Below, in pieces: positions 6,939-50,760 of a DNA stretch of 64,000 nt. Positions within the stretch are counted from its first letter, which is position 1. Each line of letters begins with the position of its first letter. Under the pieces are notes generated by a model. The model was not told where the DNA came from. It was given only the letters and a program-made list of their open reading frames with translations, and ran no database searches. The stretch covers positions 1-64,000 of IMG/VR virus record IMGVR_UViG_3300024239_000011. One strand, given 5' to 3'. The position numbers and the translations under genes were made by a program.

Positions 6939-7294
6939 TTTTTATTCCAATACCGCCACCCCTGGAACCCCTTATGAGGTATTGGCGTCGTAAGTCTATT
7001 GAATGCACCTGACCGCTCGATAAAATCACCTGACCATCGTTGACCGGTGGTCGAACATATGAAATCCCCGGAGTGCGTCCCAACAATCTCCATCCAGCCA
7101 ATGATGTGCCCGTGATAGCACAGATAGCACCGTCCACCAATTACATTACGAGTGGGCAACCGTGCCACTTTGAACCGCATTACCTGTGACCGGTCAGCGA
7201 CCGTTGCAATTTCTTTTTCGTAGTCGTCCCAGGAAATGGTAGCCGGGATCGTAATGACAATATTGGATGGTGTTTCAATTTCTGTGATTTTCAT
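6935..7294 (-). CDS. leader-bearing protein (MKITEIE), possible ASCH/PUA-like fold
   Basis: ORF ending KGFQGWRY; ATAAATA 5 nt before the ATG. Confidence 0.6.
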   Translation of the reverse strand: MKITEIETPSNIVITIPATISWDDYEKEIATVADRSQVMRFKVARLPTRNVIGGRCYLCYHGHIIGWMEIVGTHSGDFICSTTGQRWSGDFIERSGAFNRLTTPIPHKGFQGWRYWNKN

Positions 7295-7338
7295 GACAGT
7301 ATTTATTTGTGTTACACTCTAATGTTAGGAGAGTAGAT

Positions 7339-7470
7339 ATGGATTATTTCATGTCCGCAGTGATTATTGTTGCCTTTGGGCTGATCGTCTGGGCTTTCCG
7401 TAAGTCCAACAAGAAAGGCTGTGGCTGTGACTGTGGTACCAATTGTACCAAGGGTTCGAACAAGGCGTAA
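7339..7470 (+). CDS. small Cys-rich membrane peptide (FeoB-associated-like)
   Basis: Hand translation MDYFMSAVIIVAFGLIVWAFRKSNKKGCGCDCGTNCTKGSNKA; AGGAGA RBS; followed by a terminator; absent from the ORF track. Confidence 0.6.
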   Translation: MDYFMSAVIIVAFGLIVWAFRKSNKKGCGCDCGTNCTKGSNKA

Positions 7471-7473
7471 GGA

Positions 7474-7500
7474 AAAAGCCGGGCATTGCCCGGCTTTTTC
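7474..7500. terminator. intrinsic terminator
   Basis: aaaaagccggg-catt-gcccggcttttt. Confidence 0.7.
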
Positions 7501-7570
7501 ATGCTATTGCCCCCAAACGATAGTCCCATCCTTCTGATGGTCGATGTATTTATGTCTATCAAGAAGATGT

Positions 7571-7578
7571 TATAAATA
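7571..7578 (+). promoter_or_regulatory. T4-late-like promoter TATAAATA
   Basis: Exact T4 late consensus, 5 nt before ATG 7584. Confidence 0.7.
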
Positions 7579-7583
7579 ATTCT

Positions 7584-8408
7584 ATGCGCTACCAAGACCT
7601 TCTACTTGAAACGGTTCAAGACCAAAAAAGAACAGAAATCAAACGTCTGTTGAACATGCTTCCTGTCAAATGGAAGGATGAAGATGGTAAAGAAGTATGG
7701 CGTGTTGAACCAAGTCAAATTGATCGCGTACTTGTGGGCAAGAGTGACGATGAACTTGATGATTGGATTGTTGGTATTACAACAACACTTGAATACCTCA
7801 AGCAAAACCCCAAAGCGGTGCTACCTGATCCGTTCGGCGGTTTGACCATAAAAGCCAAAACGACATTGAAGACCATCCTACCGCGCGTGGGTAATAGCTT
7901 CATGAAGTGGCTCAAGGAAATGTATGATCCTGCCGATCTGAAAGCCGCCCAGACAGATGAAAGCACCCTGCTGGACGGACTATCCGAATACCTTCGTGAT
8001 GAACAAAACATCACAGTGCGCGAGGATGGATTGATTGAGTTTTGGGGATTGGACGGAACCAAGCGAAAGATCATCGGTGATCTACCGGTTGTCTTGTTCC
8101 ACTACACTGCCAGTAAGGCGCTTAAATCGATCAAGCACCATGGTCTGTTGCCTGACCGCCCCAGTGTGAATTATCGCAAGGCGCCGGGCGTCTATTTAAC
8201 GACTGAGGGAAGCGGGAATGCAATTGATGGCTATGCCCGTAATGCCGAACAACGGATCGGTGGGTACGCGATCAAGCTTGAGGTGAAGTGCTACCTCCAC
8301 GAGCTTCAGTCTGATCCAGATGATGCCGACATTTCCAGCGGGCGCCATCAGTTCATGGTAAATCAGGTTCCCCCAGACCGAATTATCGGGTCTGATCGTT
8401 ATTTCTAA
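7584..8408 (+). CDS. leader-bearing protein with C-terminal ADP-ribosyltransferase-like domain
   Basis: MRYQDLLLET leader; LFHYT...SIKHHGLLP...GVYLTT ART-fold strands. Confidence 0.6.
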   Translation: MRYQDLLLETVQDQKRTEIKRLLNMLPVKWKDEDGKEVWRVEPSQIDRVLVGKSDDELDDWIVGITTTLEYLKQNPKAVLPDPFGGLTIKAKTTLKTILPRVGNSFMKWLKEMYDPADLKAAQTDESTLLDGLSEYLRDEQNITVREDGLIEFWGLDGTKRKIIGDLPVVLFHYTASKALKSIKHHGLLPDRPSVNYRKAPGVYLTTEGSGNAIDGYARNAEQRIGGYAIKLEVKCYLHELQSDPDDADISSGRHQFMVNQVPPDRIIGSDRYF

Positions 8409-9130
8409 ACCAGCGCCTCGAAGAGTGGTTTGTGCAGTGGGTGGACACTGAAATAATGGCAAAGTAGATGCCGTTGATGTTCTGAAGTCATATCTGGACA
8501 TTTGGCGAGAAGCCGCATTACTTCAACCAAAATTTCCGGCTTAATGGCACCGTCAGGAGTCAACAGAGCCACCGACCGGAAATACCAGCCATAGTAGGCA
8601 CTGAAATCCAACCCGCCCATATGATCAATGTGAGACTGTCGCAGCCATAGGTACTGCTCACGGGTGCAGGGGTTTTTCTTGAATTCGTCGGTGGTCTGAA
8701 AACGCTTCCAGAGGGCTTCATTGCTTTCGTCCTCGGTTTTCGCGAAGAGGATGGTATCAAAGGTTTCCCAGCGAACCAGCAGTTCCCCGACGTTGATTTC
8801 AACTGTGTCCACCGCGTTTAAATCAAGTCCGGTGGTGTCCTTGGTTTCGTGGTCAATCAGGACTTCGTACATGGGCAGCGAATATTCCAGATCAACAGTC
8901 GAGCAGATGTCGGTGAAATCGTCAGCCGTAAACGGCGCTGTTTGTTTGGCTTCGGTGAGGACCACATCACCAACCGTCAGCTTGAGAATTTTGCGATTGT
9001 AATGGTCGCACAGTTTGTCGCTAATCGCATGGCGCTTGGTTTTGGTAAACACACGGGTCACTGTGATTTGCATGGTGAGGTCGGCGGCAATCAAGCCGGT
9101 CTTCTCGATCCATTCCACCAGCGTTTTCAT
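8405..9130 (-). CDS. hypothetical protein
   Basis: ORF; start moved to MKTLVEW at 9130 (AGGAA RBS). Confidence 0.7.
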   Translation of the reverse strand: MKTLVEWIEKTGLIAADLTMQITVTRVFTKTKRHAISDKLCDHYNRKILKLTVGDVVLTEAKQTAPFTADDFTDICSTVDLEYSLPMYEVLIDHETKDTTGLDLNAVDTVEINVGELLVRWETFDTILFAKTEDESNEALWKRFQTTDEFKKNPCTREQYLWLRQSHIDHMGGLDFSAYYGWYFRSVALLTPDGAIKPEILVEVMRLLAKCPDMTSEHQRHLLCHYFSVHPLHKPLFEALV

Positions 9131-9255
9131 AGCGTTTCCTTCATGTGATTGGGTTATATTATCATTCCAACCTAAAATTGTCAAGATTGGACAAAGGATT
9201 TCCTTGTCCGATTGCGAGTTGTAAGGCATATTTGCGGTAACGTTTCGATATCTGA

Positions 9256-10350: not shown

Positions 10351-10835
10351 GCGAATCTTCCCTTTTTCTCGTCTACAAAAATATGTCCCGTGGGTACGAA
10401 GAGTATCGTAACGGGCATGGCACGGGTCCGATGATCTGGGGGCATTTGGAGCAGCTTTATGGTCTCCCTCGGTGGGTGAGCGATAACAAGAAGCTCTGGG
10501 CGTTGGCGCGTGATCCAAAAGTTCCCGTGCATCTTCGGCTCTGCCATGCCTTCACCTTTGACCGGGCAGTTACGCCTGTTCACAATCTTCTTGAAATGGC
10601 GGAAGCTTTGGAGCTTGCGCATGAAGATATTGTCAAGGGTCGGGAGAATGGGTGGTCGCATTTCGCAGACATCGCCAACGATTTGCGGGCAATCCACAAG
10701 AAGCATAACCGCTATCTTGTTGGGTTGGCACTCAATTGCACATCGGTCGCTGACGTATGGACATACCGTATGAAAGCGAAAGATGGGTGGAACTGCTACA
10801 AATACGCCACCGACTTGACCACAGAAGAAGAATAA
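10347..10835 (+). CDS. hypothetical protein
   Basis: ATGA overlap with the previous stop. Confidence 0.7.
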   Translation: MSESSLFLVYKNMSRGYEEYRNGHGTGPMIWGHLEQLYGLPRWVSDNKKLWALARDPKVPVHLRLCHAFTFDRAVTPVHNLLEMAEALELAHEDIVKGRENGWSHFADIANDLRAIHKKHNRYLVGLALNCTSVADVWTYRMKAKDGWNCYKYATDLTTEEE

Positions 10836-10890
10836 AACGACGAAGGGGAGGCGTGATTGCCTCCCCTTCTGTCTCACGATGAACCGTTAT

Positions 10891-11271
10891 TTACGCGCAC
10901 AGCATTGCGGGCGTCAAGAACTTTTTGTCCGCCCACTTCCCGTAATAAAGCGTCAATTCTTCCCCGGCGGCAATGTCCCGCAATGCTGTGAACTTCATAT
11001 GCCGTTCACTGGTGTTGTTCGATGCCACCATATTCGGTGAAGACGCATGGTTCATAAAACTTCCCACCGCGACCGTGCAGTAGATTTTCTGTTTTGTTCG
11101 CGGGTCTATAGCCCATGGGAACGTGTACGGCTTCAGCGAATTCGGAACCGAATCCCATGAATAGAGGACAACCGGGAACGAATATTCCGACCCGGTTTTG
11201 ATACCTACCTCGGTGAAGACGCCACGTCCATGAATCGGGCTGGGACGAATATCGTAGATCAGGATACCCAT
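10891..11271 (-). CDS. SET-domain lysine methyltransferase-like protein
   Basis: SPIHGRGVF, FMNHASSPN, ALRDIAAGEELTLYYG. Confidence 0.85.
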   Translation of the reverse strand: MGILIYDIRPSPIHGRGVFTEVGIKTGSEYSFPVVLYSWDSVPNSLKPYTFPWAIDPRTKQKIYCTVAVGSFMNHASSPNMVASNNTSERHMKFTALRDIAAGEELTLYYGKWADKKFLTPAMLCA

Positions 11272-13114: not shown

Positions 13115-13217
13115 CTGTTATTGTGATAGCCCAGATCATACACCAACTTTCAAATTAAGTCCATCCCTCTTATTCATCCCCAGATATAAATATCTTCAAA
13201 CCACATGAGGCGGCAAA

Positions 13218-14441
13218 ATGGGTATATCGTTCACAGGAAGTTTGATACCAGTTGGTACTTTCAAAATTAAAACCAATATTCCCCCGGTTTGGGTAACAGC
13301 AACCGGATCACTTGGGGAGGCTAATGGCGGACACCCATTTACATTTAATTTGTCGGCAACCGATCCAGAAAACGCACCATTAACGTATTCACTGATTTCT
13401 GGAATTATACCATCCGGGTTGACAATATCAGGTTCGCAAATTATCGGCACACCAGAAAATATCCCAGGTACATATACCTTTGTTGTTCGGGTTAGTGATG
13501 GCGAGGGTAATAATGATCGTCAATTCTCACTACAGGTCACCAATCAAACACCAATTTGGACGACGGCTGGTGGCTTGCTTGGCTCAGTAGTAAGCGGGGC
13601 TACGGTAAACTACACCCTGTCCGCAACTGATCCTAATAATGATCCAATAACCTATTCAATTGTAAGTGGATCATTACCAAGCGGAATAACATTAAACTCA
13701 TCAACTGGGGTTATTTCAGGTTTAACCACTGTTCTCGGCACTTATAATTTCACCGTTCAGGCGAATGATGGTCGTGGTGGATCAGTCAATCGTGCATTTG
13801 AATTTACGGTTAATCCCAACTATCCAAATACAGCATTTCTAGTTCACCCAACTTCATTAACATTTGCAGATAGCAAAAATAGTGTGCTTCCTTCAGCATC
13901 AACCGCAACGTACACAAATGGCGGTGGGTATGAAGTTATGGGGTTTAATCTAAACAATTATATTCGATACCCTAATGCGGCTGGGTTAAACATATCCACA
14001 GGTGATTTCACAGTCGAATTATGGTTCTATCCAAGATCAACCGGTACCTATCGTAATTTAGCAGTGTGGAAAGCAGGAAGTTTGTCCCCACTTTATTTTT
14101 CATATCATTCGGGCTATGCTCGCTTATGGGGTTCGTCGGCGGGCGGATCATGGGATTTGTTTAATGCATGGGGTTCATCTTCACCATTACCGGTAAACCA
14201 ATGGCACCATGTTGCTATATCACGAAGCAGTCAATACTATGTCATGCATGTTAATGGTGTTAAAACAAATGAACTAACAACTGCATTAAATCCAATGGCA
14301 TCTAATATGGGCGTTGTTCTTGGGTCGTATCAGGACACTGCCTCTGAATTCTTTGATGGCTATATGCGAGAATTCCGCGTAACTAAAGGACAAGCACTAT
14401 ACGGTAGTGGGAATTTCACCCCAGAAACCAATCTACTTTAA
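13218..14441 (+). CDS. MGISF-leader fibre/decoration protein: 2 Ig-like (He_PIG/cadherin-like) repeats + LamG/ConA domain
   Basis: ATDPENAPLTYS..SG.LPSG repeats; GDFTVELWFY, WHHVAISR, GYMREFRVTKG; TATAAATA at 13185-13192. Confidence 0.8.
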   Translation: MGISFTGSLIPVGTFKIKTNIPPVWVTATGSLGEANGGHPFTFNLSATDPENAPLTYSLISGIIPSGLTISGSQIIGTPENIPGTYTFVVRVSDGEGNNDRQFSLQVTNQTPIWTTAGGLLGSVVSGATVNYTLSATDPNNDPITYSIVSGSLPSGITLNSSTGVISGLTTVLGTYNFTVQANDGRGGSVNRAFEFTVNPNYPNTAFLVHPTSLTFADSKNSVLPSASTATYTNGGGYEVMGFNLNNYIRYPNAAGLNISTGDFTVELWFYPRSTGTYRNLAVWKAGSLSPLYFSYHSGYARLWGSSAGGSWDLFNAWGSSSPLPVNQWHHVAISRSSQYYVMHVNGVKTNELTTALNPMASNMGVVLGSYQDTASEFFDGYMREFRVTKGQALYGSGNFTPETNLL

Positions 14442-19904: not shown

Positions 19905-19997
19905 AATGACAATCAGTTCCGCCGTTCTCTGAGGACACTTATAGCCCAGGTCGAGAGATGTGTCAATAAGAAAAATCAACAACGACTAAATATGGCT

Positions 19998-20537
19998 ATG
20001 CGCCTTAATGACCTATACGAATCCGCTTATAGCTATCAAACGACCTATTGGTTTAATCCCCGAACCAATGAGGTCATTTCTGCTGATAATCACGGCACCG
20101 TGGTTATGACTGATCCATCAAATTTTGAAATTGATTCCGCCATCGTTGATCAGATGTGGAATTGTTTTGATCAAGACGATGGTTCATCGAACGATGACGC
20201 AAAATTACCATCCGAACTTGTCGTCGGTTGGCCGCCTTATGGTCGGTGGAATGAGGATGATGCGTGGGAACAATTGGCGATGAATCGGGGCTGGGTTCGT
20301 GTTGGTGAAGGGGGATCGTCGTATGCATCATATTTTAGCGCCAGTACATGCGACGCAATTTGGACAGCAGTGCGCTATGTAACCAACAATGGCAATCCCG
20401 GTATTGGCGTGGAAATCGAAATCAGTCGATCATCCGGGGCAATGTATGGGAAATTAAGTCTCGATTCCCTTGATAAATTTATCAAGGGTGGCGCCCGGCG
20501 AGCAGAAGAGTTTCTGCGACGGAATCTAAGCAACTAA
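19998..20537 (+). CDS. leader-bearing hypothetical protein (MRLNDLYES)
   Basis: CTAAATA 5 nt before ATG 19998. Confidence 0.7.
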   Translation: MRLNDLYESAYSYQTTYWFNPRTNEVISADNHGTVVMTDPSNFEIDSAIVDQMWNCFDQDDGSSNDDAKLPSELVVGWPPYGRWNEDDAWEQLAMNRGWVRVGEGGSSYASYFSASTCDAIWTAVRYVTNNGNPGIGVEIEISRSSGAMYGKLSLDSLDKFIKGGARRAEEFLRRNLSN

Positions 20538-25428: not shown

Positions 25429-26064
25429 TTATTTGTCCCGCTCAAACTTCCTCTTGAAGTTGTGTCGCAATCCCTCGTGAGCCAATAGCACACACTCTTC
25501 AAGATAGATGGTCCGATAATACGGGTGATCGTCATAGAACAAAATTTCTTCCTCTCGGGCGAAGAAATTCAGTTCACGGCGTTGCTCGTCGTATTCCCCA
25601 GGCTTAGTATCACCGCACCACGTCATATCATCAAGCGTGCTGGGCACATACAGCATGATCTCCGTGCGGTAAATCGGTTTCTCCACAATCACGCACGGCT
25701 CGATAATAGCGAAATTGCTCGCGGCACCGTAATTCAATGAATAACTGACTATACCATCTGCGCGTAGTGTGAGTTGCCCCTTATTAAGCAAACGATCAAC
25801 TTGATCGGTGGTTAGTTTTATCCCGCGATAGCATGTTTGAGCATTCGGCGGCAGGCGTTTATAGCGTGCCGGGATCGTTACGCTTGGAAGCATTTTTAGC
25901 TGTCGTTTCTTCTCATAGCGCCGATTGACACCGAGCCAGTCTTGAAGCCAGTGCAGCAATGATGCATTTCGTACATATCCCGCACGCGATGGAATGTTGG
26001 GAGTTTGCTTCCCATACATCAAGTCATCGTAGTATTCCCAGTCATCTATTTCATCAAGCCGCAT
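25429..26064 (-). CDS. leader-bearing R-S-E-type ADP-ribosyltransferase-like protein
   Basis: MRLDEIDDWE leader; CYRGI, IVSYSLNYGAASNFA, REEEIL; GTAAATA 5 nt before the ATG. Confidence 0.6.
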   Translation of the reverse strand: MRLDEIDDWEYYDDLMYGKQTPNIPSRAGYVRNASLLHWLQDWLGVNRRYEKKRQLKMLPSVTIPARYKRLPPNAQTCYRGIKLTTDQVDRLLNKGQLTLRADGIVSYSLNYGAASNFAIIEPCVIVEKPIYRTEIMLYVPSTLDDMTWCGDTKPGEYDEQRRELNFFAREEEILFYDDHPYYRTIYLEECVLLAHEGLRHNFKRKFERDK

Positions 26065-26151
26065 GCAGGTATTTACTCATTGTACGTTAAGATTTGACAC
26101 AGGGTTTCGCACTATGTTAAAAATGAGCAAACTTTTTGAGGGGAATAACCC

Positions 26152-37578: not shown

Positions 37579-37609
37579 TCGACATTCGAGGGATTGGGTA
37601 AATACGCTT

Positions 37610-38401
37610 ATGCGTATTTCAGACCTGATCCCTCTTGCCGAAATGGCATTGCCATCCGAAGTCGTCAAAACGACCCGGTACTATCACGGCACAGCTTCCG
37701 AAATCTTTGCCAAGAAGATCATGAAGCAAGGCATTCAACCGCCTTCGTTCGTGATGGATAATGGGAAAAAACAAAACTCCCATTTGACCCCGGTCGAGGG
37801 GAAAGTCTACATCACGCCTTCCATCGCATACGCCCAGATATACGCTATCGGCGGAAATGTGGCGGGCAACCCCTCACTCCGGGTTCGCTACAAAGGCAAT
37901 GAATCCAAATTCGATTACTACATCAAGACCGACCCGGCGGATCGCCACTACGGGCGCTACGGTTACGTGTTTGTGATCAATGGGTCGCAGCTTGCCGATA
38001 TTCAACCAGATGAAGACAGCATCGGTGAATTTCTTGGTCAGATACTCTGTCGGGAAAGCACCATCGAGTTCATGGACCCGTTTGAGGCGAATAGAATGCG
38101 CACCGCATTGGCGGACAGCACTCTTGTCGGGATGATCAAATATCTCGCAGGAACGCATCTTGCCGATAGCACCTTGCGACGGATCAAGGACGGTGAGTAT
38201 TCCTATATGGCGAAGGCGGGCAAAGTCCTCGTCAAGCGCATGCCGGATTGGGCAAAGGTGTGCATGGTTGAATATGGCTTCCATTGTGCGCACACCGGAC
38301 CATTGATCCCCGATGAAGTATGGAAGATCGACAAAACAAAAATCGGGTGGCTTGTGCGTGACGGTAGCAATTTCTTCGAGATAGCTAAACGGGTTCGTTG
38401 A
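37610..38401 (+). CDS. leader-bearing ADP-ribosyltransferase-like protein
   Basis: MRISDLIPLAEM; YYHGTA...KIMKQGIQP...GKVYITPSIAYAQIYA; GTAAATA 5 nt before the ATG. Confidence 0.65.
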   Translation: MRISDLIPLAEMALPSEVVKTTRYYHGTASEIFAKKIMKQGIQPPSFVMDNGKKQNSHLTPVEGKVYITPSIAYAQIYAIGGNVAGNPSLRVRYKGNESKFDYYIKTDPADRHYGRYGYVFVINGSQLADIQPDEDSIGEFLGQILCRESTIEFMDPFEANRMRTALADSTLVGMIKYLAGTHLADSTLRRIKDGEYSYMAKAGKVLVKRMPDWAKVCMVEYGFHCAHTGPLIPDEVWKIDKTKIGWLVRDGSNFFEIAKRVR

Positions 38402-40184: not shown

Positions 40185-40808
40185 TTACAGTTTCCACCCT
40201 TCAAGTCCGCCCCCAAGCGGTTTGTCCAGATTGCCGCCGATAGCTGCCCGGTGGAACACCAGATCATCGTAGTCTTCCTGATCCGTCGAGGTGTTGGGCT
40301 TGAGCGGTTTGTTCGAACGCGGATGATCCACCTCGAATTCATGCGCCGGGTGTGGTGGGGCGTCGTGATCGATGTCGCCAATTGCGTATTCTTCCGCTTC
40401 GTTGCTGTCGGTATGGGTCGGTCCATAATTCATCCGTGATATGAAAGCGTTGTAGACCTGTTCCGCTTTGTGGATGTTGAAATAGCGAATGTCACGCACC
40501 GGGACGATCCGATAATTCTGACGCAATTTGGTATAGTTCAGTCCGATGCGGAATGGTTTCTGACCGGCGACTGCATAGGTCTTCAGAAGATCAAGGGACC
40601 GATCACGAGTGAGGCTGACGCCGGAAACTTCCTTGCCATCGACCAACTGATAACGCCCTTCTTCGTCCCGCTTCAACGTCCCATGAACGACATGGGTGGA
40701 TGCGCCACATTTGATACGGTTGGTCTTGAGCATGCGGCGCAAATGATCCCCTGAGGTGAAGTGGTAGATCAGTTGATCCGGGGCATTGATGATCTCGTCT
40801 ATTCTCAT
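40185..40808 (-). CDS. leader-bearing ART-like protein
   Basis: MRIDEIINA; LIYHFTS...MLKTNRI...GVSLTRD...NEAEEY. Confidence 0.55.
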   Translation of the reverse strand: MRIDEIINAPDQLIYHFTSGDHLRRMLKTNRIKCGASTHVVHGTLKRDEEGRYQLVDGKEVSGVSLTRDRSLDLLKTYAVAGQKPFRIGLNYTKLRQNYRIVPVRDIRYFNIHKAEQVYNAFISRMNYGPTHTDSNEAEEYAIGDIDHDAPPHPAHEFEVDHPRSNKPLKPNTSTDQEDYDDLVFHRAAIGGNLDKPLGGGLEGWKL

Positions 40809-41791
40809 TTCGTCCCCTCGCTGATCCGTGGGTCTTCGCGGTTGTACGTACCGGTGTTGCTCAATGCTGATTTGACTTGGTGGGGATCGAAAACCGCCAA
40901 CGTCAACGGCGCCCCTGGATGTTCACGGGTCCAGAACCCATCGAATTTGTTCCGGCGCATCCATGCCCGCACCGCAGGTTTTTCAAGGATACCGAAGTCA
41001 CCGCCCTTGAGATATCCCACTGCGGTTTTTGGTCCGTACAAGGCGCCAGGAAAAATCGCCTGGAAGTTCTTCTCAAGGAATGCTGCAAGCCTGTCTAGAT
41101 GCTCTTGGTTCTGGTAGTCGAACGGGTTCTCCATCCGCACGTAGCACGGCAGGACATGCCCGCCGCGTGCGAAGTAGGATGCCGTATCCGGGGAGGTCGC
41201 AAAGAAAATCGCGTTACCGCCGGTTCCCCGATTGCCTGGGAGCTTGAACTGATCAAAGGCGGGCTTGGAAGTCCCGTGGTACATCACCGCCGGGTTGCCG
41301 TCTTCATCCACGACTTTGCTGTTTCCGAACCATGCCCAGAACGCCGAATCTGGTTCAGGGAGGCGGGCTTCGAGGATGCTCTCAAACTTGCGTTTGTGGC
41401 GGTAGCTCCAAAATGCGGCGCCATCCGCTTCGAGGTTGCTGGACGAATCAATGGTGTAGCCGATGCGCTCAAGGTGGTCGTACAGCGCCGTTGCGATCCC
41501 ACGACGACGGAAGCTCGGCTTGGTTTCAATGCGGTGGAATTCGCCACTGTCATTTTCATCCGGATAGAACTTACCTTTGGCAACCTCTACCGCGTCGATG
41601 AAGGCACGGACGACCACCATAGTGGCGTCTTCATCTTCATCCGAGGGCTGACGTTGTGCAGTAACGTTCAGCACCGTTCCATCTGCCAATTTGTATTCAG
41701 CAGAGTTACGCGCAAAGCCCCCAACTACATCACCAAGTCTGGTATAGTGGCGATCTTGAAAACGCGCTCCGGTAATCTCAATAATTCTCAT
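40805..41791 (-). CDS. leader-bearing GNAT + ART-PolyVal-like fusion
   Basis: FRRRGIATALYD...GAAFW (GNAT); FWAWFGNSKVVDEDGNPAVMYHGT...AIFFATSPDTASYFA...CYVRMENPF...FDG...AVFDPHQVKS (ART). Confidence 0.75.
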   Translation of the reverse strand: MRIIEITGARFQDRHYTRLGDVVGGFARNSAEYKLADGTVLNVTAQRQPSDEDEDATMVVVRAFIDAVEVAKGKFYPDENDSGEFHRIETKPSFRRRGIATALYDHLERIGYTIDSSSNLEADGAAFWSYRHKRKFESILEARLPEPDSAFWAWFGNSKVVDEDGNPAVMYHGTSKPAFDQFKLPGNRGTGGNAIFFATSPDTASYFARGGHVLPCYVRMENPFDYQNQEHLDRLAAFLEKNFQAIFPGALYGPKTAVGYLKGGDFGILEKPAVRAWMRRNKFDGFWTREHPGAPLTLAVFDPHQVKSALSNTGTYNREDPRISEGTK

Positions 41792-44396: not shown

Positions 44397-44945
44397 ATGC
44401 GAATTTTAGAAATAACCGAACATGTTGCGCGTGTGGTCGATACGGAGCCTCATAAAGGCATATGGTTCCGCCACGAAAGTCCTCATTGGATTACTCGGCT
44501 TCGACCGCTAACCTATGAAGAACTTAAAGTAGCGCGTCCTGAATATGATGTACCCGAACGTGTGAAAACTGAAAAACAATATCACGCAATGCTCCCTACA
44601 CATCCGGAAAATACCAGCTTCTTATATGCGACGGTGACGGGTTGTCACAAGATGCCAGACCCGCTCGATTACCTTGGTTTTACCTATTACTTCAAACTCA
44701 CCCCTGATCAAGTCGAACAGTCAATCTTTGACGTGGTTGATCGGAAGACATGGATGCAGCCAACTGTTGGGGCAGCCGGTTTCCGACAAGCCAAGGAAAT
44801 TTGGGACGCTCATTCGAACGAATTCAAATCCTATGACGACCCTGAAATTGGGCAAATTGATCCACGTATTGAAGTAATCATGCCATTTTCGGTCAGCCCA
44901 CTACTTTACATCCCACAAATTGAAGATAGACAATCTCCTAAATAG
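44397..44945 (+). CDS. leader-bearing hypothetical protein (MRILEITE)
   Basis: ATAAATA upstream; WFRHES motif. Confidence 0.7.
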   Translation: MRILEITEHVARVVDTEPHKGIWFRHESPHWITRLRPLTYEELKVARPEYDVPERVKTEKQYHAMLPTHPENTSFLYATVTGCHKMPDPLDYLGFTYYFKLTPDQVEQSIFDVVDRKTWMQPTVGAAGFRQAKEIWDAHSNEFKSYDDPEIGQIDPRIEVIMPFSVSPLLYIPQIEDRQSPK

Positions 44946-44970
44946 CAGTATGTGACAGGAGGAATTTAAA

Positions 44971-46914
44971 ATGGGTATTTCTTTTAGTGGTGGCGTAATT
45001 CCGATTGGTACTTTCAAAATAAAATCAAATATTCCTCCGGTATGGGTAACGGCAGCCGGGTCGCTTGGATCAGCTAATGGCGGGCAGCCATATACGTTCA
45101 ATTTATCGGCAACTGATCCAGAGAACGCCCCTCTTACGTACACGGTTGTTGGTGGTTCGCTACCAGCCGGTTTAGGCATCAGTGGACCACAAATCATCGG
45201 TACCCCGATCAATAACCCTGGCACGTATCAATTCACGGTGCGGGTATTTGACGGTGAAACGGCGGCTGATCGCGTTTTTACAATCGATGTAACCAATCAA
45301 ACACCGATCTGGACTACTGCGGGCGGATCGCTGATTGACGCCACTGAGAATGCCGCCTATTCATTCTCGTTTGAAGCTGCCGATCCCAATAATGATACCG
45401 TAACCTATTCAATTTCATCTGGCTCGTTACCAGCGGGTCTTACACTTGGTTCAACCGGTGAATTGTCTGGTACACCTACGCAATTAGGTATTAGCAATTT
45501 TACAGTACGGGCTACTGATACATTAGGCGCTTTTGTTGATCGCGCGTTTTCAATAAACGTTGCATCGGCTGGTGATCCATATTGGACTGGTGTTACTTTG
45601 TTGATGCACATGAACGGTAATTTCACCGATCAAAAAGGGCATACATTTACAGCAACCAATGCAACCGCTACCGGCGCCGGTAAATTTGGGTCAAATTCTG
45701 CAAGTATTGGTACGGGATATATTACAACTCCATCTAGCAGTGATTGGCAATTTAAGTCCAGTGATTTTACAGTCGAAAGCTGGGTCTATGTTCCAGATGC
45801 AACGTATCTTGCTAATTCTGCCGTGATTGTTGGAACTCACGGTACCGGATCAACTGACGGGTGGACGGTATATTTAAATACCAATGGTACTGCGACCGGA
45901 TGGACAACAAGTTCGGGTGGGTTTGGAACCGGAAATCATGCAGTCACGTCCGCGTCTCCTATAAATTATGCGTCGTGGAACCATGTTGCGTTTGTACGTA
46001 ATGGTAACGTTTTGACGATTTACCTGAACGGCGTAGGAAATTCAGTTACTATATCTAATGGGTATAGTGTTTATAACACTCCCAATAGTTTACGAATTGG
46101 CGCAAACGTTAATAACGGTAACAATTTTACAAAATCAGGCGCATTGATTGATGAAGTGCGAATCACCAAAGGCGTGGCTCGTTACACTACCAATTTTGCA
46201 CCACCACAGTCTGCCTTCCCGGATACTGTCAAGCCCGATCCGTATTGGGCAAATACCAGTATGCTGTTGCGGTTTGATAATTCACTGTCTGATGTGACTG
46301 GGAAACATACTATTACTGGATCAAGCACCACATACGCTGGTTCTTTAATCGGAAATACGTGTCTACAAATCAATGCTAATGGGTATATCTCCACGCCTGC
46401 CCATGCCGATTTCAATTTCGGTGCGGGAGATTTTACGGTTGAGATGTGGATTTGGACACCATCAACTTCCGCTCTGTCCCAAATACCAATGCTTTTCTGT
46501 CAGTACCAAAGTTATAACCAACCAATAAATGCCACACAGGTATATTTCAACCCTGATGGTACTATTGTTGGATACATAACTGCTAATGGAAAGCACGAAG
46601 TAAATGCGGATCACATTGGCGTAATGTCTTCAGCAATAACATTCAGTGAGTGGAACCATGTTGCGTTTGTACGTAATGGCACGAAACTACAACTGTATGT
46701 TAATGGCAACGGTCAAGCCGATGGTGGGTCTAATGTTCCAGTAGGGTACACTGCCTTTAGTTCGAATCTTCCAGTCACTATCGGTGCATACAATTCAACG
46801 GGTTATCACCGTTTCCAAGCCACCACTTATATTGATGAAGTCCGGGTGACCAAAGGGGTCGCGCGCTATACAAGCAACTTCACTCCGCTAAAAATACCAC
46901 ACGCAGCAGTGTAA
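44971..46914 (+). CDS. MGISF-leader fibre/decoration protein: 2 Ig-like repeats + 2 LamG domains
   Basis: DPENAPLTY..GSLPAG repeats; DPYWTGVTLLMHMNG, DFTVESWV, WNHVAFVR, IDEVRITKGVARYT twice. Confidence 0.85.
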   Translation: MGISFSGGVIPIGTFKIKSNIPPVWVTAAGSLGSANGGQPYTFNLSATDPENAPLTYTVVGGSLPAGLGISGPQIIGTPINNPGTYQFTVRVFDGETAADRVFTIDVTNQTPIWTTAGGSLIDATENAAYSFSFEAADPNNDTVTYSISSGSLPAGLTLGSTGELSGTPTQLGISNFTVRATDTLGAFVDRAFSINVASAGDPYWTGVTLLMHMNGNFTDQKGHTFTATNATATGAGKFGSNSASIGTGYITTPSSSDWQFKSSDFTVESWVYVPDATYLANSAVIVGTHGTGSTDGWTVYLNTNGTATGWTTSSGGFGTGNHAVTSASPINYASWNHVAFVRNGNVLTIYLNGVGNSVTISNGYSVYNTPNSLRIGANVNNGNNFTKSGALIDEVRITKGVARYTTNFAPPQSAFPDTVKPDPYWANTSMLLRFDNSLSDVTGKHTITGSSTTYAGSLIGNTCLQINANGYISTPAHADFNFGAGDFTVEMWIWTPSTSALSQIPMLFCQYQSYNQPINATQVYFNPDGTIVGYITANGKHEVNADHIGVMSSAITFSEWNHVAFVRNGTKLQLYVNGNGQADGGSNVPVGYTAFSSNLPVTIGAYNSTGYHRFQATTYIDEVRVTKGVARYTSNFTPLKIPHAAV

Positions 46915-47739: not shown

Positions 47740-47740
47740 T

Positions 47741-47906: not shown

Positions 47907-48290
47907 ATGCGAATCGTGTCTCAAGTGGTGGTTTATGAATTGGTGCATCATCCCGATACGACCCACCCATCGGAATCGTGGGATGAGTGGCGGCGGGATT
48001 TTTCGTTTATTCTCAATGACGACGATTTATTTTCGGTATTGAAGCAACAACTGATCTCGCAAAATCCGGGTGGGGTTCTTGCTCCGCATGATATCAAGTC
48101 AAAATTTGAACATGTGTTTACCTTCACCTATGACCGTCCTGAAATTCCTGAAAACATCGCAAAAGATGCGTGGGGACGCATGATGATAAAAATTGCAAAT
48201 GCCACAAAACACCGAACAAAAATTTTTGGCTGTGAAGTGCGTAGGTGTTTGGAAAATAACGGTGAATTATTTGTACTGACACCAGCATAA
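47907..48290 (+). CDS. hypothetical protein
   Basis: ORF behind a TTGACA promoter. Confidence 0.6.
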   Translation: MRIVSQVVVYELVHHPDTTHPSESWDEWRRDFSFILNDDDLFSVLKQQLISQNPGGVLAPHDIKSKFEHVFTFTYDRPEIPENIAKDAWGRMMIKIANATKHRTKIFGCEVRRCLENNGELFVLTPA

Positions 48291-48307
48291 GGAGCCTTTT
48301 GGCTCCG

Positions 48308-49690
48308 TCAGTAGTAATCTGGATCGGGTTGTGGTAGTTTAATTTTCAAACCGAAATACGCGCAAACATTGAAACCTTTACTGCGTTCAATTACGTTATT
48401 CCGAACCGCATCCCGGATGTTCGCAGCAAGTATTTTCCCGGTAATACCCTTCTGCTTCATCATCACCAATAGTCGGCGTTTGATCGCCGGGATGATGGCT
48501 TGGTCAAGGTTCCCGGCAACAAAGTTTACAATGCGCCACGCCACGTTTTCCGGGCTGTTAATGTCGATGTCCTCTCCGTCCAGATCGGTGTACTCTGGGT
48601 TACCGCCTGCAATGTGATAGAACGCTCGACGGGCATTTGGGAACTTGCGAAGTGCCGCATCTACCTCGTTATCCGGTTCACCGGTTTCCCGGCGGGCGGC
48701 AATGATCATACGAGCGATTTTCTCGTGGTATTCACGGGTATAGGCGTTCTCGTCACTTGCAATCAGCATAACTCGGACGAAGCGGAGAATCGCGTTACGG
48801 AGGTCGCCAGGGCGTTGATGGTAGTTGTTTCCACCGAGGATACGGAACTCAACGTACCCACTTTTCTCCATGCGGAAAAACGCCACGGTGAACGATTTCT
48901 CGCTGCCACCACCACCGCCATAATTGTCCTTGAACTGAATACGACCCATATTGTTCATTTCGCGCCCAAGCATAGTGCTCAGATAGTCCATGACTTTCTT
49001 GAGGTCTTTCGAACGGGAAATATCCTGTTTGGGGGTGCGTTCCCATGGGTGAAGGTAATCGTCACGTAGACGCTTGATTAGCGGGTCGATACGGCTGGCG
49101 ATGTTGTTTTTTCCGACCGACAGTACCCGTTCGAAATTAGATTTCAGGTGATCCTCACCGAGAAAAACCATGACTTTGAGCGGGTCGAGTTTGCTCATAC
49201 GAGCTTTGTCGTTGAAAGATATACCAACATGGAACCCCGTGGTTCCGTTGGTCTGGTAATCGTGTTCGGTGTAGTAGGAGAACAGTTCATTCATTGCCTC
49301 GAAGAACTGCGTTGGCTCCATTGGCGGTGAAACGATTTCAAGCGGCATGATACCGTTCTGCTCTTTCGTCTCTTTACCGTCTACGGTGACGATTTCGCCA
49401 ATAGAAACATCTCGGTCAATATACCAATGGCTACCGGAGAAATCCTTCGGTTTTTGGTCAAACACGAGTTTCATGGGACTATCACCCCACCCTTTCTCGC
49501 GTGCAAATTTGAATACCGACGACCGTTGTTCAAGATCGGCTGCCATCTGCTCGATAGTGCGGCGTTCTTGTATGGGATTACCACGGATGAAGAACTCGGA
49601 TTCAAAACCAAGCATCACTTCACCGAGATTCGACCCTGCCAAATCCCGTTGTCCCATGCGCACTGCTTCATTTAGTTCTTTGATTTTCAT
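48308..49690 (-). CDS. leader-bearing putative amidoligase (COOH-NH2 ligase fold)
   Basis: MKIKELNEA; GFESEF, DRDVSI, LEIVSPP, TNGTTGFHVGIS, VEFRILGG; CTAAATA 5 nt before the ATG. Confidence 0.75.
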   Translation of the reverse strand: MKIKELNEAVRMGQRDLAGSNLGEVMLGFESEFFIRGNPIQERRTIEQMAADLEQRSSVFKFAREKGWGDSPMKLVFDQKPKDFSGSHWYIDRDVSIGEIVTVDGKETKEQNGIMPLEIVSPPMEPTQFFEAMNELFSYYTEHDYQTNGTTGFHVGISFNDKARMSKLDPLKVMVFLGEDHLKSNFERVLSVGKNNIASRIDPLIKRLRDDYLHPWERTPKQDISRSKDLKKVMDYLSTMLGREMNNMGRIQFKDNYGGGGGSEKSFTVAFFRMEKSGYVEFRILGGNNYHQRPGDLRNAILRFVRVMLIASDENAYTREYHEKIARMIIAARRETGEPDNEVDAALRKFPNARRAFYHIAGGNPEYTDLDGEDIDINSPENVAWRIVNFVAGNLDQAIIPAIKRRLLVMMKQKGITGKILAANIRDAVRNNVIERSKGFNVCAYFGLKIKLPQPDPDYY

Positions 49691-49694
49691 AGAG

Positions 49695-49952
49695 CTATTT
49701 AGGGCGGTGTACTAAGCCCCGTGCCACCTGAAGAATGGTCCGACTATCAACTATAGTGGCGCCATGTTGAATTGCGTCTTCGCGTTGTTCCCGTGTGACA
49801 TCATAATGCGGATGGACTTTAGGCTTATGATACCAGCACCGCTTTACACCAATCTGTGCAGCGAAATCATGGAGTTCCGAAAGGCTGTCGGCGGTCATAT
49901 GATAGCGCAATTTACCTTTATACAGCATAGCCGCATCATCCACGTAGATCAT
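49695..49952 (-). CDS. DUF4031-like protein
   Basis: IYVDD...HMTADSLSELHDFAAQIG.KR.W...HYDV. Confidence 0.7.
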   Translation of the reverse strand: MIYVDDAAMLYKGKLRYHMTADSLSELHDFAAQIGVKRCWYHKPKVHPHYDVTREQREDAIQHGATIVDSRTILQVARGLVHRPK

Positions 49953-50304
49953 TGATCACACGTTGTCGAAATTCGGTTACTATTTCTGCAAATTTATCAG
50001 CAGAACATTGTCCACGTCCTAGATTTGCCATTCTACTACAAATGACAATATTTTCTTTGGAATATCCAAACTGAGCATCAAGACGATCAACGCTAATTGC
50101 CAGCGGATTGTAAGATGTGAAAATATCAAACGGGTCCAATGGGATATCAAACCAGTAACATCTTGAATTTTGTGCAAGAAATATTTCTTGAAGATCATCG
50201 GGGGTTACTTGGATTTCCTTGGTCATATCCCGACCCTTCCGTTCACGCCACGCCCGCCCATTGATACGCATGTTTGAAATTAATTTTTTCCAGGGGTTCC
50301 GCAT
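49936..50304 (-). CDS. HNH-like endonuclease
   Basis: QNSRCYW...SVDRLD...GYSKENIVICS..AN. Confidence 0.6.
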   Translation of the reverse strand: MRNPWKKLISNMRINGRAWRERKGRDMTKEIQVTPDDLQEIFLAQNSRCYWFDIPLDPFDIFTSYNPLAISVDRLDAQFGYSKENIVICSRMANLGRGQCSADKFAEIVTEFRQRVINDLRG

Positions 50305-50366
50305 TTGTTCCTCTTGATAATGCGGAAATCTTAAAACGCGAAATAGTGATTTTCAATAAATATCAG

Positions 50367-50760
50367 ATGCGTATAAAAGAATTACTCAACGAATACAAGG
50401 TCGAACATACTCCAAACGGGTATATCGTATTTCGCAACCCAAGTGCAACCGAGTTGGCGAATCTTGTCAACCGTATGGGGTCACTACGCGGAATTTACCA
50501 TAGTGGTACCAACTATGTATGGGGAGCAATGGAAGGTGTTCATTGCCACTTATTTTGGGAACTCGGGTTGGACGAACACGACCCGGAATGCCTTATATAT
50601 TTTGTTACGAACGATAAAAACGATAGCGTAGATTGGACGACGCGACTTAGTGTCGCCCCGGCAGGTTTTTAACTACTGTGTGTCACCCTCCCGTCTTGCT
50701 AAAAAATTTCCAAAGTTTCAGCGTATGCTTGGTATAACTGATGCCAAGGTAACAGCCTGA
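50367..50760 (+). pseudogene. leader-bearing gene (MRIKELLNEY) with a 1-nt frameshift in a T run at about 50670
   Basis: Frame stops at 50672; removing one T gives ...GF-NYCVSPSRLAKKFPKFQRMLGITDAKVTA ending at 50760. Confidence 0.5.

What the first reader, a model, noticed from the sequence alone, without database searches (positions are those of the whole stretch)
7294..50367. Late box placed exactly 5 nt before the ATG: probable leaderless late mRNAs
Seen: TAAATA-N5-ATG with no Shine-Dalgarno at 7294(-), 7584(+), 19998(+), 26064(-), 37610(+) and 49690(-), and N4 at 50367(+). All seven are leader-bearing genes. Known: T4 late transcription starts a few nt downstream of TATAAATA. Inference: the transcript begins at or next to the A of AUG. 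The result is a compact promoter+ATG+targeting-peptide cassette that could turn any captured ORF into a late, packaged protein, and leaderless translation may escape host-shutoff of normal initiation.
Basis: partly seen in the sequence, partly recalled or inferred. Interest (0 to 1): 0.75.

Follow-up and report, generated by a model that had tools for sequence, protein, structure and literature searches.

The report
Late promoter fused directly to start codon
In this 543-kb uncultured giant phage, about a fifth of its T4-style late promoters sit exactly five bases before an ATG with no ribosome-binding site, so these late mRNAs probably begin at their own start codon; other uncultured giant phages show the same layout, but the cultured T4-like phages I tested do not.

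Summary
All seven sites are as described. TAAATA-N5-ATG occurs 7 times in the window against 0.58 expected. Genome-wide (543 kb) the spacing from TAAATA to an ORF-opening ATG spikes at N=5 (25 cases; 0-4 at other N from 0 to 20), beside a broad N21-35 hump of ordinary genes with a Shine-Dalgarno (SD) leader.

TAAATA is the commonest intergenic hexamer. The genome encodes a gp55-family late sigma, and virion genes carry the box. In T4 the box spans -13 to -6, so N5 puts +1 on the A of ATG.

Supporting signs: the base before the ATG is a pyrimidine in 25/25 cases; the start is ATG in 25 of 26; there is no SD although normal genes have one; many sites are first genes after a divergent neighbour or a terminator. 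Orthologues at 42-51% identity keep N4/N5.

Other uncultured giant phages repeat the spike. T4, PA5oct, 121Q, XbC2, Phosso and three cyanophages do not.

The N-terminal leader resembles the T4 capsid-targeting sequence and sits on unrelated proteins, but it is separable from leaderlessness. No start sites were measured, and the host-shutoff idea is untested. I rate this a new variant of known kinds.

The parts
7292..7305 (-). Late box TAAATA (7305-7300), 5-nt spacer CTGTC, ATG (7294-7292) of ORF 6935-7294 (119 aa, MKITEIE...).
   Evidence: No SD and no alternative start. The upstream neighbour is divergent, 289-nt gap. Other assemblies call the same 119-aa product. Coding score is weak, so confidence in this gene is lower.
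7571..8408 (+). Perfect T4-type box TATAAATA (7571-7578), spacer ATTCT, ATG 7584; gene 7584-8408 (274 aa, MRYQDLLLE...).
   Evidence: A terminator hairpin lies 80 nt upstream. Two orthologues at 42-45% identity carry TAAATA-N4-ATG with unrelated flanks. Weak sub-threshold ART-like Pfam hit.
7472..7504 (+). Intrinsic terminator (GC-rich hairpin followed by a T run) ending the small SD-led gene 7340-7470, just upstream of the 7571 box.
   Evidence: It matches many unrelated contigs in public runs because it is a generic hairpin. It implies that gene 7584 needs its own promoter within the 80 nt before the ATG.
19987..20537 (+). Box 19987-19992, spacer TGGCT, ATG 19998; gene 19998-20537 (179 aa, MRLNDLYE...).
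   Evidence: An in-frame ATG at 19992 overlaps the box and would lie upstream of the predicted +1.
25429..26075 (-). Box 26075-26070, spacer CCTGC, ATG 26064; gene 25429-26064 (211 aa, MRLDEID...).
   Evidence: Divergent upstream neighbour only 87 nt away. ORFan in PHROGs and Pfam.
37599..38401 (+). Box 37599-37604, spacer CGCTT, ATG 37610; gene 37610-38401 (263 aa, MRISDLIPLAE|MALP...). It belongs to a large conserved family carrying a YYHGT motif.
   Evidence: 243 homologues found. Many begin with a T4-CTS-like decapeptide followed by MAxP. Orthologue promoter spacing varies: N7, N18+SD, N27, or translational coupling.
48308..49701 (-). Box 49701-49696, spacer GCTCT, ATG 49690; gene 48308-49690 (460 aa, MKIKELNE..., Amidoligase_2 domain).
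   Evidence: An orthologue at 51% identity on an ENA contig keeps TAAATA-GCTTC-ATG and begins MRITELLE.
50357..50672 (+). Box 50357-50362, 4-nt spacer TCAG, ATG 50367; gene 50367-50672 (101 aa, MRIKELLNE...).
   Evidence: Divergent upstream neighbour 62 nt away. A paralogue lies at genome position 427339(-).
44939..46914 (+). For comparison, an ordinary leadered late unit: box 44939-44944, 26 nt containing AGGAGG, then ATG 44971 of a baseplate-wedge-like gene.
   Evidence: Shows the same box driving a virion gene through a normal SD leader.
13185..14441 (+). For comparison: TATAAATA 13185-13192, 25-nt leader, then ATG 13218 of a virion-structural-like gene.
40805..41791 (-). Leader-bearing gene (MRIIEITG...) with TAAATA at N23 plus an SD; GNAT + ART-PolyVal domains. 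An example of the leader peptide without leaderlessness.

Best explanation
TAAATA (extended consensus g-[A/C]-TAAATA-c) is this phage's late promoter. It is read by host RNA polymerase carrying the phage's gp55-family sigma, which needs no -35 element. As in T4, transcription should start at the sixth base after the box.

Most late units place that +1 about 16-30 nt before the ATG and carry an SD. In about 20% of late units (about 25-28 genes, seven of them in this window) the box sits exactly 5 nt (rarely 4) before the ATG. The mRNA would then begin with, or within a base or two of, AUG and would have to be translated as a leaderless message, by direct binding of ribosomes to a 5'-terminal AUG.

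The arrangement is a selected layout, not a relic of copying. It occurs on unrelated genes with unrelated flanks, is kept in orthologues at 42-51% identity, and flips to SD-led versions in more distant ones.

The MRIxEI(L)xE leader is a separate, protein-level signal. It is probably a T4-type capsid-targeting and protease-cleaved propeptide. It is carried by many late accessory enzymes and is over-represented among the leaderless genes, but it is not required for leaderlessness.

Shown directly: the motif, the spacing, the absence of SD, the sigma gene, and conservation. Inferred: the position of +1, leaderless translation, late timing, and packaging.
For: Spacing: spike at N5, 25 against 0-4 (Poisson p about 7e-21). 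Window count 7 against 0.58 expected.

Promoter identity:
- TAAATA is the top intergenic hexamer, 212 of 314 sites in 15% of the genome.
- 145 of 219 non-coding sites have a same-strand gene start within 100 nt downstream.
- A gp55-family sigma lies at genome 258632-259477(-): E=3.9e-83 to phrog_12791 and 1.1e-20 to the T4 gp55 family phrog_234.
- The head-closure gp4 homologue, a baseplate-wedge-like gene and the portal gene carry the box plus a leader, while the sigma gene itself does not.

Position of +1:
- The T4 box occupies -13..-6 (PMC2988020).
- In 108 leadered promoters the base at N5+1 is A in 47% and G in 27%.
- In N5 genes position -1 is C or T in 25/25, against 53% at ordinary starts.

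Translation:
- No SD, and no SD-led alternative start.
- Start codons: ATG 25, GTG 1, TTG 0, against 18% non-ATG in SD-led genes.

First-gene status:
- 12 of 28 sites have a divergent upstream neighbour; for most of these the gap is 60-170 nt.
- 182586(-) and 182650(+) are a back-to-back N5 pair within 63 nt.
- Terminators lie 80 nt and 14 nt upstream at 7584 and 233103, and directly before the box of an N5 tail-tube-like gene in G001.

Conservation and replication:
- Orthologues keep N5/N4.
- G001 (452 kb): N5=24, N4=9.
- G002: 27 against 4 for the control.
- 119 IMG/VR loci: 77 non-seed N5 cases against 1-22 at the other spacings from N0 to N20.
- A G001 N5 start aligns with residue 1-4 of its SD-led G000 orthologue.

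Class specificity: sigma70-like promoters (TTGAC-N16-18-TAnnnT) are nearly all leadered, with only 7 at N6-8.
Against: - No transcript 5' end has been measured for this phage or any relative that has the spike. The public 'RNA' runs that hold it behave like DNA, at a depth of about one read.
- The box lacks the first TA of T4's TATAAATA at most sites, so the T4 spacing rule is an extrapolation.
- No gp45 sliding-clamp homologue was found and gp33 was not tested, so the activation mechanism may differ from T4.
- In leadered promoters position -1 is not pyrimidine-rich, so start-site choice may be looser than assumed.
- Some N5 genes have a co-directional gene ending 4-31 nt upstream and could also be reached by read-through transcripts.
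- The host is unknown, so its capacity for leaderless translation is unknown.
Confidence: 0.75

Rival explanations
1. Near-leaderless rather than strictly leaderless. The box is the late promoter, but the polymerase starts 1-3 nt before the A (or at variable positions), giving a 5' UTR of a few bases that is still SD-free.
For: N4 sites exist (3 in G000, 9 in G001), and one orthologue has N7. Position -1 is not strongly biased in the leadered promoters.
Against: The spike is one base wide: N5=25 against N4=3 and N6=1. Position -1 is a pyrimidine in 25/25 with a purine at +1. The T4 numbering fits exactly. This rival is functionally almost the same as the main reading.
Confidence: 0.12
2. The hexamer acts on translation rather than transcription. 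These genes would be read from upstream promoters or by read-through, and the A/U-rich TAAATA at -11..-6 would serve as an SD-independent ribosome-loading or enhancer element (for example through ribosomal protein S1).
For: Several N5 genes have a co-directional gene ending 4-31 nt upstream. A/U-rich enhancers of initiation are established in E. coli (general knowledge).
Against: About 100 SD-led genes carry the same hexamer 21-35 nt upstream, where it cannot act as a ribosome site. Twelve of 28 sites follow a divergent neighbour, and others follow terminators, so they need a promoter exactly there. A gp55-type sigma is encoded. The Y(-1)/A(+1) signature belongs to transcription initiation.
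Confidence: 0.07
3. Start-codon mis-assignment or chance. The true starts would lie elsewhere, and the N5 ATGs would be coincidental in-frame codons next to promoters.
For: Gene starts here rest on my own ORF heuristics. Two or three N5 ORFs have weak coding scores: 7294(-), 155322(+), 308882(+).
Against: The statistics. No SD-led alternative start within 150 nt. The same N-terminal leader peptide begins at SD-led starts elsewhere. Orthologue N-termini align to the N5 Met. Independent gene callers choose the same starts.
Confidence: 0.03
4. The box is read by a different factor (host sigma70 using an extended -10, or the phage's other sigma70-family protein at genome 223195-223398) and is not specifically 'late'.
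For: A second sigma (Sigma70_r2, E=1.8e-13) is encoded. The box lacks the leading TA of the T4 consensus. No gp45 was found.
Against: The box sits before virion genes and is absent before the gp55-like gene. No -35 signal accompanies it. TTGAC-type promoters form a separate, leadered class. Even if this rival were true, the leaderless geometry would stand.
Confidence: 0.1

Closest known systems
Bacteriophage T4 late promoters (gp55/gp33/gp45 system)
   Same: An AT-rich box containing TAAATA with no -35 element, a gp55-family sigma, and boxes placed before virion genes. The T4 geometry (box at -13..-6) predicts +1 at the sixth base after the box.
   Different: T4 late genes, including its CTS-bearing ipII and ipIII, have SD leaders. 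T4 shows no N5 excess: 10 against 5 for the control. Here the first two bases of the octamer are not conserved, and no gp45 homologue was detected.
Leaderless genes of Deinococcus-Thermus, Actinobacteria and archaea (-10 box directly before the ORF), and Thermus phage phiYS40
   Same: A -10-type promoter element at a fixed short distance from the start codon, with no SD. In D. radiodurans the motif lies about 6-7 bp before the ORF (PMC12340547). A spacing spike is the accepted in-silico signature. From memory only (Sevostyanova et al. 2007, paper not held): phiYS40 middle and late transcripts were reported as leaderless.
   Different: Those cases use the housekeeping sigma and a TANNNT box at N6-7, in hosts where leaderless mRNAs are the norm. 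Here a phage-encoded gp55-type sigma and an N5 spacing are used, in a genome whose other genes rely on SD, and only for a subset of late units.
Lambda cI mRNA from PRM and other single leaderless phage genes
   Same: A phage mRNA that starts at the A of AUG and is translated without an SD (general knowledge; cited in PMC12340547).
   Different: Those are isolated regulatory genes. Here about 25-33 genes per genome share the design.
T4 capsid-targeting sequence (CTS) of internal proteins and Alt
   Same: A short conserved N-terminal peptide on otherwise unrelated proteins. In T4 the CTS decapeptide MKTYQEFIAE ends ...I-A-E (read from T4 DNA); that gp21 cleaves after this L/I-x-E motif is general knowledge. 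Here L/I-x-E ends at residues 8-12 in 19/30 leader-bearing proteins against 41/656 others. A gp21-type protease is encoded. Homologues of gene 37610 begin MITFKQFIAE against T4 MKTYQEFIAE. The cargo includes ART-PolyVal, amidoligase and GNAT enzymes, recalling the packaged ADP-ribosyltransferase Alt (PMC3012670).
   Different: The consensus is one residue shorter (MRIxEI[IL]xE). Packaging and cleavage are not demonstrated. About a third of these genes are leaderless, which T4's are not.
Jumbo phages PA5oct, Rak2/121Q group, XbC2, Phosso
   Same: Nearest cultured relatives by late sigma, at 40-47% identity, and by DNA polymerase of cassette-bearing IMG/VR contigs.
   Different: They show no N5 excess. 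PA5oct holds a single full cassette, at 180252(-), next to its head-protease gene; that gene's annotated start is 15 nt further upstream.

Membership tests
T4-type (gp55-dependent) late promoter | AT-rich TATAAATA-like box at the -10 position with no conserved -35 | tested here: met
   The TAAATA core is invariant by construction. Flanks are g-[A/C] upstream and c downstream, and no signal appears at -35. Seven perfect TATAAATA sites lie in the window against 1.29 expected. The first TA of the octamer is not conserved.
T4-type (gp55-dependent) late promoter | Phage encodes a gp55-family sigma | tested here: met
   Genome 258632-259477(-): phrog_12791 E=3.9e-83, phrog_234 (T4 gp55) E=1.1e-20. 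It is 47% identical to the PA5oct 'sigma factor for late transcription'. A direct search with the T4 gp55 protein found nothing.
T4-type (gp55-dependent) late promoter | Boxes precede late (virion) genes | tested here: met
   The gp4 homologue (N26+SD), a baseplate-wedge-like gene (N26+SD), the portal gene (N42) and a virion-like gene at 13218 (N25) all carry the box; the sigma gene itself lacks it.
T4-type (gp55-dependent) late promoter | Activation through the gp45 sliding clamp and the gp33 co-activator | tested here: inconclusive
   No match to T4 gp45 or to phrog_223. gp33 was not searched. A divergent clamp cannot be excluded.
T4-type (gp55-dependent) late promoter | Transcription starts about 6 nt after the box, late in infection | not testable with these tools
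   No usable RNA data. Indirect support: A/G enrichment at N5+1 in leadered promoters.
Leaderless mRNA genes | -10-type promoter element at a fixed short distance from the start codon (genome-wide spacing spike) | tested here: met
   N5=25 against 0-4. Replicated in G001, G002 and 119 IMG/VR loci.
Leaderless mRNA genes | No Shine-Dalgarno although the genome otherwise uses one | tested here: met
Leaderless mRNA genes | Strong preference for AUG as the start codon | tested here: met
   ATG 25, GTG 1, TTG 0 at N5, against 18% GTG/TTG among SD-led genes.
Leaderless mRNA genes | The 5' end of the mRNA maps at the start codon and is translated | not testable with these tools
   Requires start-site mapping, toeprinting or ribosome profiling; one search gave nothing usable.
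T4-type capsid-targeting sequence | Conserved N-terminal peptide of about 10 aa on otherwise unrelated proteins | tested here: met
   About 39 ORFs carry it. Only one 5-member paralogue family and two paralogue pairs exist among the 56 leader-bearing or N5/N4 ORFs compared. The consensus is given.
T4-type capsid-targeting sequence | The peptide ends in the prohead-protease site L/I-x-E, and a gp21-type protease is encoded | tested here: met
   19/30 against 41/656, p=1e-14. A gp21 homologue lies at 208.8-209.2 kb, E=1e-14.
T4-type capsid-targeting sequence | The proteins are found in proheads or virions and are N-terminally processed | not testable with these tools
   Needs virion proteomics of a cultured relative.

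The most novel reading that the evidence does not exclude
A lineage of uncultured giant phages runs a dedicated leaderless arm of its late programme. A fifth to a third of late transcription units would start at the AUG. Translation of this arm would be controlled separately from SD-led messages, for example through changes in ribosomes or initiation factors late in infection, or through immunity to SD-directed shutoff. Combined with a CTS-like leader, it would form a plug-in module of about 45 bp that makes any newly acquired ORF late-expressed and head-packaged. That would explain how these genomes accumulate diverse injected counter-defence enzymes.
Probability: 0.15. Interest if true: 0.85.

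Novelty: new variant of a known kind. Interest (0 to 1): 0.62.

Why it matters
T4-type late promoters and leaderless mRNAs are each textbook material. In the literature I could search, I found no report of them fused into a recurrent gene layout. Start-site maps of phiKZ (early infection) found no leaderless transcripts and those of AR9 reported none (5' UTRs of 26-491 nt).

If start-site mapping confirms the reading, several things follow:
- It gives a simple rule (box-N5-ATG) for correcting start codons in giant-phage genomes. PA5oct gp213 may be one case.
- It shows that a phage infecting an SD-using host relies on leaderless translation for dozens of late genes, which raises the question of how the infected cell translates them.
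- It defines a very compact late-expression element. Together with the CTS-like leader, this could be useful for engineering phages that package cargo proteins.

The contrast also offers a clean comparative system: eight cultured gp55-bearing phages show no spike, while several uncultured giants do.

Tried and rejected
- RNA evidence. Two run searches found only wastewater 'RNA-Seq' runs holding 6-17% of the sampled words. Laid on 4501-10500, they gave a few single 151-nt pieces flagged as probably DNA, plus many unrelated contigs that match only the generic terminator hairpin at 7472-7504. No 5'-end information came out of this.
- Megablast of 7000-12000 against cultured phages: no match.
- The search for related loci in IMG/VR with the 49690 and 7584 proteins: no relatives. 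Relatives were reached later through the large protein database.
- Direct searches with T4 gp55 and gp45 proteins in the genome: nothing. The gp55 homologue appeared only with profile searches. gp45 was still absent with phrog_223.
I used the fetched loci for a non-seed histogram instead.
- Recent duplication as the source of the cassettes: rejected. Upstream identity is 26%, and the proteins are mostly unrelated.
- The N5 layout as a general property of gp55-bearing phages: rejected. T4, PA5oct, 121Q, XbC2, Phosso, S-PM2, Syn9 and P-SSM2 show no excess.
- Strict linkage of the leader peptide to leaderlessness: rejected.
- The Sevostyanova 2007 paper on phiYS40 is not held in the library, so that comparison rests on memory.
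- Translation-factor or ribosomal-protein genes in the genome were not searched.

Full report
WHAT THE WINDOW IS

The window is the first 64 kb of a 543,035-bp virus record (49% GC) assembled from subsurface and soil metagenomes. It is a giant myovirus. It has T4-like large terminase, head-closure gp4, sheath, portal, gp21-type prohead protease and gp23-type capsid genes, and baseplate- and tube-like genes in the window. By late sigma factor, its nearest cultured relatives are PA5oct, Sinorhizobium phage Phosso and the Rak2/121Q group, at 40-47% identity.

CHECKING THE OBSERVATION

All seven sites read exactly as described. TAAATANNNNNATG occurs 7 times in the window against 0.58 expected, and none of 100 shuffles reached 7.

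For every TAAATA in the genome (314 on both strands) I recorded the distance to any ATG that opens at least 60 codons. The histogram is bimodal: a one-base-wide spike at N=5 (25 cases; 0-4 at every other spacing from 0 to 20) and a broad hump at N=21-35. Counting all ATGs, N5 gives 31 against 4 for the reversed-pattern control. TAAATA is the commonest hexamer at -11..-6 of all ORF-opening ATGs.

The lack of a Shine-Dalgarno sequence (SD) is informative because this genome normally uses one. G reaches 41-48% at -11..-8 of ordinary starts, and GGAG or GAGG is about 13 times commoner there than at internal ATGs. The N5 starts score zero on my SD measure and almost never have an SD-led alternative within 150 nt. 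Gene callers used in other public assemblies of the same phage picked the same N5 ATGs for the 7294 and 7584 genes.

IS TAAATA THE LATE PROMOTER?

- It is the most abundant intergenic hexamer: 212 of 314 copies lie in the 15% of the genome that is non-coding. It is co-oriented with a gene start within 100 nt in 145 of 219 non-coding cases.
- The flanks give g-[A/C]-TAAATA-c with nothing conserved at -35. Seven perfect TATAAATA sites lie in the window against 1.3 expected.
- The genome encodes a gp55-family sigma: phrog_12791 'sigma factor for late transcription' at E=3.9e-83, and the T4 gp55 family phrog_234 at E=1.1e-20.
- Virion genes (gp4 homologue, baseplate-wedge-like, portal, a virion-like gene at 13218) carry the box followed by a 25-42-nt leader, with an SD at the gp4, baseplate-wedge-like and portal genes. 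The sigma gene itself has none.
- No gp45 clamp homologue was found, and gp33 was not tested. The activation step may therefore differ from T4.

WHERE WOULD TRANSCRIPTION START?

Geiduschek and Kassavetis number the first T of TATAAATA as -13 (PMC2988020). The box therefore spans -13..-6, and five bases separate it from +1. That is exactly the N5 geometry, with +1 on the A of ATG. Three internal signals agree:
- In 108 leadered promoters the base at N5+1 is A in 47% and G in 27% of cases.
- In the N5 class the base before the ATG is C or T in 25 of 25 cases, against 53% at ordinary starts (p about 1e-7). This is the usual pyrimidine(-1)/purine(+1) initiation context. In the IMG/VR set it is roughly 90% by eye.
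- N5 starts are ATG 25, GTG 1, TTG 0, although 18% of SD-led genes use GTG or TTG. This fits the known dependence of leaderless initiation on a 5' AUG.

DO THESE GENES NEED THEIR OWN PROMOTER AT THAT SPOT?

- Twelve of 28 N5/N4 sites have a divergent upstream neighbour, and for most of these the gap is only 60-170 nt. 182586(-) and 182650(+) are a back-to-back N5 pair within 63 nt.
- Gene 7584 lies 80 nt after a strong terminator hairpin at 7472-7504. Gene 233103(-) lies 14 nt after one.
- In the related giant phage G001, a tail-tube-like gene has terminator, box, five bases and ATG within about 50 nt.
- Other sites follow a co-directional gene by 4-31 nt and could additionally receive read-through transcripts.

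COMPARATIVE EVIDENCE

- The amidoligase-domain gene 49690(-) has an orthologue at 51% identity on an ENA contig. It keeps TAAATA-GCTTC-ATG (here the spacer is GCTCT) and begins MRITELLE. The same 20-kb stretch has three more N5/N4 genes.
- Two orthologues of 7584 at 42-45% identity carry TAAATA-N4-ATG within unrelated, GC-rich flanks.
- Orthologues of 37610 vary: N7, N18 with AAGGAG, N27, or translational coupling.
- One G001 N5 gene is SD-led with a GTG start in this genome. Its N5 Met aligns to residue 1-4 of that orthologue.
- The layout is therefore kept over moderate evolutionary distances and exchanged with SD leaders over larger ones.

DISTRIBUTION

Of the 82 matches inspected in the first 80 loci, 79 open ORFs of at least 50 aa. 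Unconstrained positions repeat MKIxEI[IL]xE and an A before the box.
- After excluding those seed sites, the same 1.13 Mb shows an independent N5 spike (77 against 1-22 at the other spacings from N0 to N20), mostly on genes without the leader.
- Whole records: G001 (452,799 bp, 49% GC) has N5=24 and N4=9 (27 against 3 by raw pattern). G002 (261 kb) has 27 against 4; G004 has 8 against 2; G005 has 5 against 1; G003 has 9 against 9.
- Cultured gp55-bearing phages show nothing: T4 10 against 5, PA5oct 15 against 12, Phosso 3 against 2, 121Q 6 against 11, XbC2 5 against 5; S-PM2 5 against 3, Syn9 3 against 3, P-SSM2 6 against 6.
- PA5oct has a single complete cassette, TAAATA-TTGTT-ATG MKIKEIILE, at 180252(-). 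It lies next to the head-protease gene, and that gene's start is annotated 15 nt further upstream.
- Sigma70-like promoters in this genome (TTGAC-N16-18-TAnnnT, 128 sites) are almost all leadered, with only 7 at N6-8. Leaderlessness is therefore mainly a late-class feature.

THE LEADER PEPTIDE AND THE 'CASSETTE' IDEA

- About 39 ORFs begin M-[RK]-[ILV]-x-[DE]-[ILV]. The consensus is MRIxEI[LI]xE.
- The peptide is tightly linked to the late box: 9/21 leaderless genes, 14/100 leadered late genes and 7/564 others (Fisher p=0.005 and 5e-13).
- Beyond residue 12 the proteins are mostly unrelated, apart from one five-member paralogue family and two pairs.
- Upstream DNA of the six window N5 sites is 26% identical, which is random, and codons for the leader vary. 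These are therefore not recent copies.
- L/I-x-E ends at residues 8-12 in 19/30 leader-bearing proteins against 41/656 others. A gp21-type protease is encoded.
- The 37610 family (243 homologues) shows N-termini such as MITFKQFIAE-MAAP. The T4 capsid-targeting sequence MKTYQEFIAE was read directly from T4 ipII/ipIII DNA, where it is SD-led.
- Recognisable cargo domains are ART-PolyVal (41791-, 440067-, weakly 57101+), Amidoligase_2 (49690-) and GNAT. This is the kind of enzyme T4 packages and injects, such as Alt and the internal proteins, which 'share only a conserved CTS' (PMC3012670).
- A targeting-propeptide role is therefore plausible but unproven. The peptide is separable from leaderlessness: more than half of the N5 genes lack it, most leader-bearing genes have SD leaders, and most G001 N5 genes lack it.

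WHAT COULD NOT BE SHOWN

No start site or expression timing was measured. The public runs that hold this phage are low-depth and DNA-like. The host, and therefore its ability to translate leaderless mRNA, is unknown. The 'escape from shutoff' idea has no evidence for or against it.

LITERATURE

Full-text searches found no report of leaderless late mRNAs in gp55/T4-like or jumbo phages. dRNA-seq of early phiKZ infection found no leaderless transcript (PMC8244752). AR9 5' UTRs are 26-491 nt (PMC5312081). The PA5oct study lists TATAATA and TTGAC motifs only (PMC7318152). The nearest precedent is the -10 box placed 6-7 bp before ORFs in Deinococcus-Thermus (PMC12340547) and, from memory, Thermus phage phiYS40 (paper not held).

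VERDICT

The leaderless-late-mRNA reading is the best explanation (about 0.75, plus about 0.12 for a near-leaderless variant). The cassette idea is half right. The shutoff idea is untested. I rate it a new variant of known kinds, of moderate to high interest.

Noticed in passing
window 30827-58563 and genome-wide (e.g. 32371-, 35571-, 40184-, 40808-, 41791-, 44397+, 57101+, 58087+): About 39 late genes share an N-terminal peptide MRIxEI[IL]xE that ends in the T4 prohead-protease motif L/I-x-E. Homologues of gene 37610 elsewhere begin MITFKQFIAE, nearly the T4 capsid-targeting sequence. This is probably a family of packaged or injected proteins.
   Followed up: partly
window 40805-41791(-), 57101-58048(+), 48308-49690(-); genome 439447-440067(-), 183675-184880(-): The leader-bearing or N5 proteins include ART-PolyVal ADP-ribosyltransferase, GNAT and Amidoligase_2 domains. 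These are typical of phage 'polyvalent' or counter-defence proteins. ART-PolyVal forms a five-member paralogue family.
   Followed up: partly
window 37610-38401(+): This gene belongs to a large, unnamed, widely distributed family (243 hits; contigs up to 549 kb; ocean, freshwater and soil sources). It has an invariant YYHGT motif right after the leader, and Pfam gives no hit. The motif recalls the H-G-T/S of H-Y-E-class ADP-ribosyltransferases (from memory, untested).
   Followed up: no
window 14481-16880(-), 29759-30796(+): A PhoH-like/RtcB fusion (799 aa) and an RNA ligase (phrog_968) together suggest an RNA-repair module.
   Followed up: no
window 61214-62389(+): A transposase gene (phrog_506, E=6e-128) sits inside the phage genome.
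   Followed up: no
window 7340-7504(+): A tiny SD-led membrane-like ORF (43 aa, weak FeoB_associated hit) is followed by a textbook terminator. The 32-nt hairpin matches many unrelated contigs in wastewater runs, so it is generic and inflates run-search 'shares'.
   Followed up: yes
whole record: Reads or contigs about 99-100% identical to this phage occur in wastewater runs of 2025 and in several other public assemblies, although the record came from subsurface and soil samples. Identical proteins are also listed on a contig of 869,618 bp, larger than this 543-kb record. That contig could be a longer assembly, a concatemer or a chimera.
   Followed up: no
window 33710-34636(-) and 34723-35571(-): The T4 gp17 (large terminase) match covers only residues 91-321, within a 308-aa ORF. 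The ORF immediately upstream (282 aa) is a leader-bearing gene. The terminase may be split or truncated at its N-terminus.
   Followed up: no
PA5oct NC_071039 179881-180267(-) (locus L148): PA5oct gp213 is annotated as starting 15 nt upstream of a TAAATA-N5-ATG MKIKEIILE cassette. The annotated start lies inside or before the box and may be wrong. The gene is divergent from the head maturation protease gene.
   Followed up: partly
genome 223195-223398(+): A second sigma70-family (region 2) protein is encoded besides the gp55-like factor. Its promoter class is unknown.
   Followed up: no
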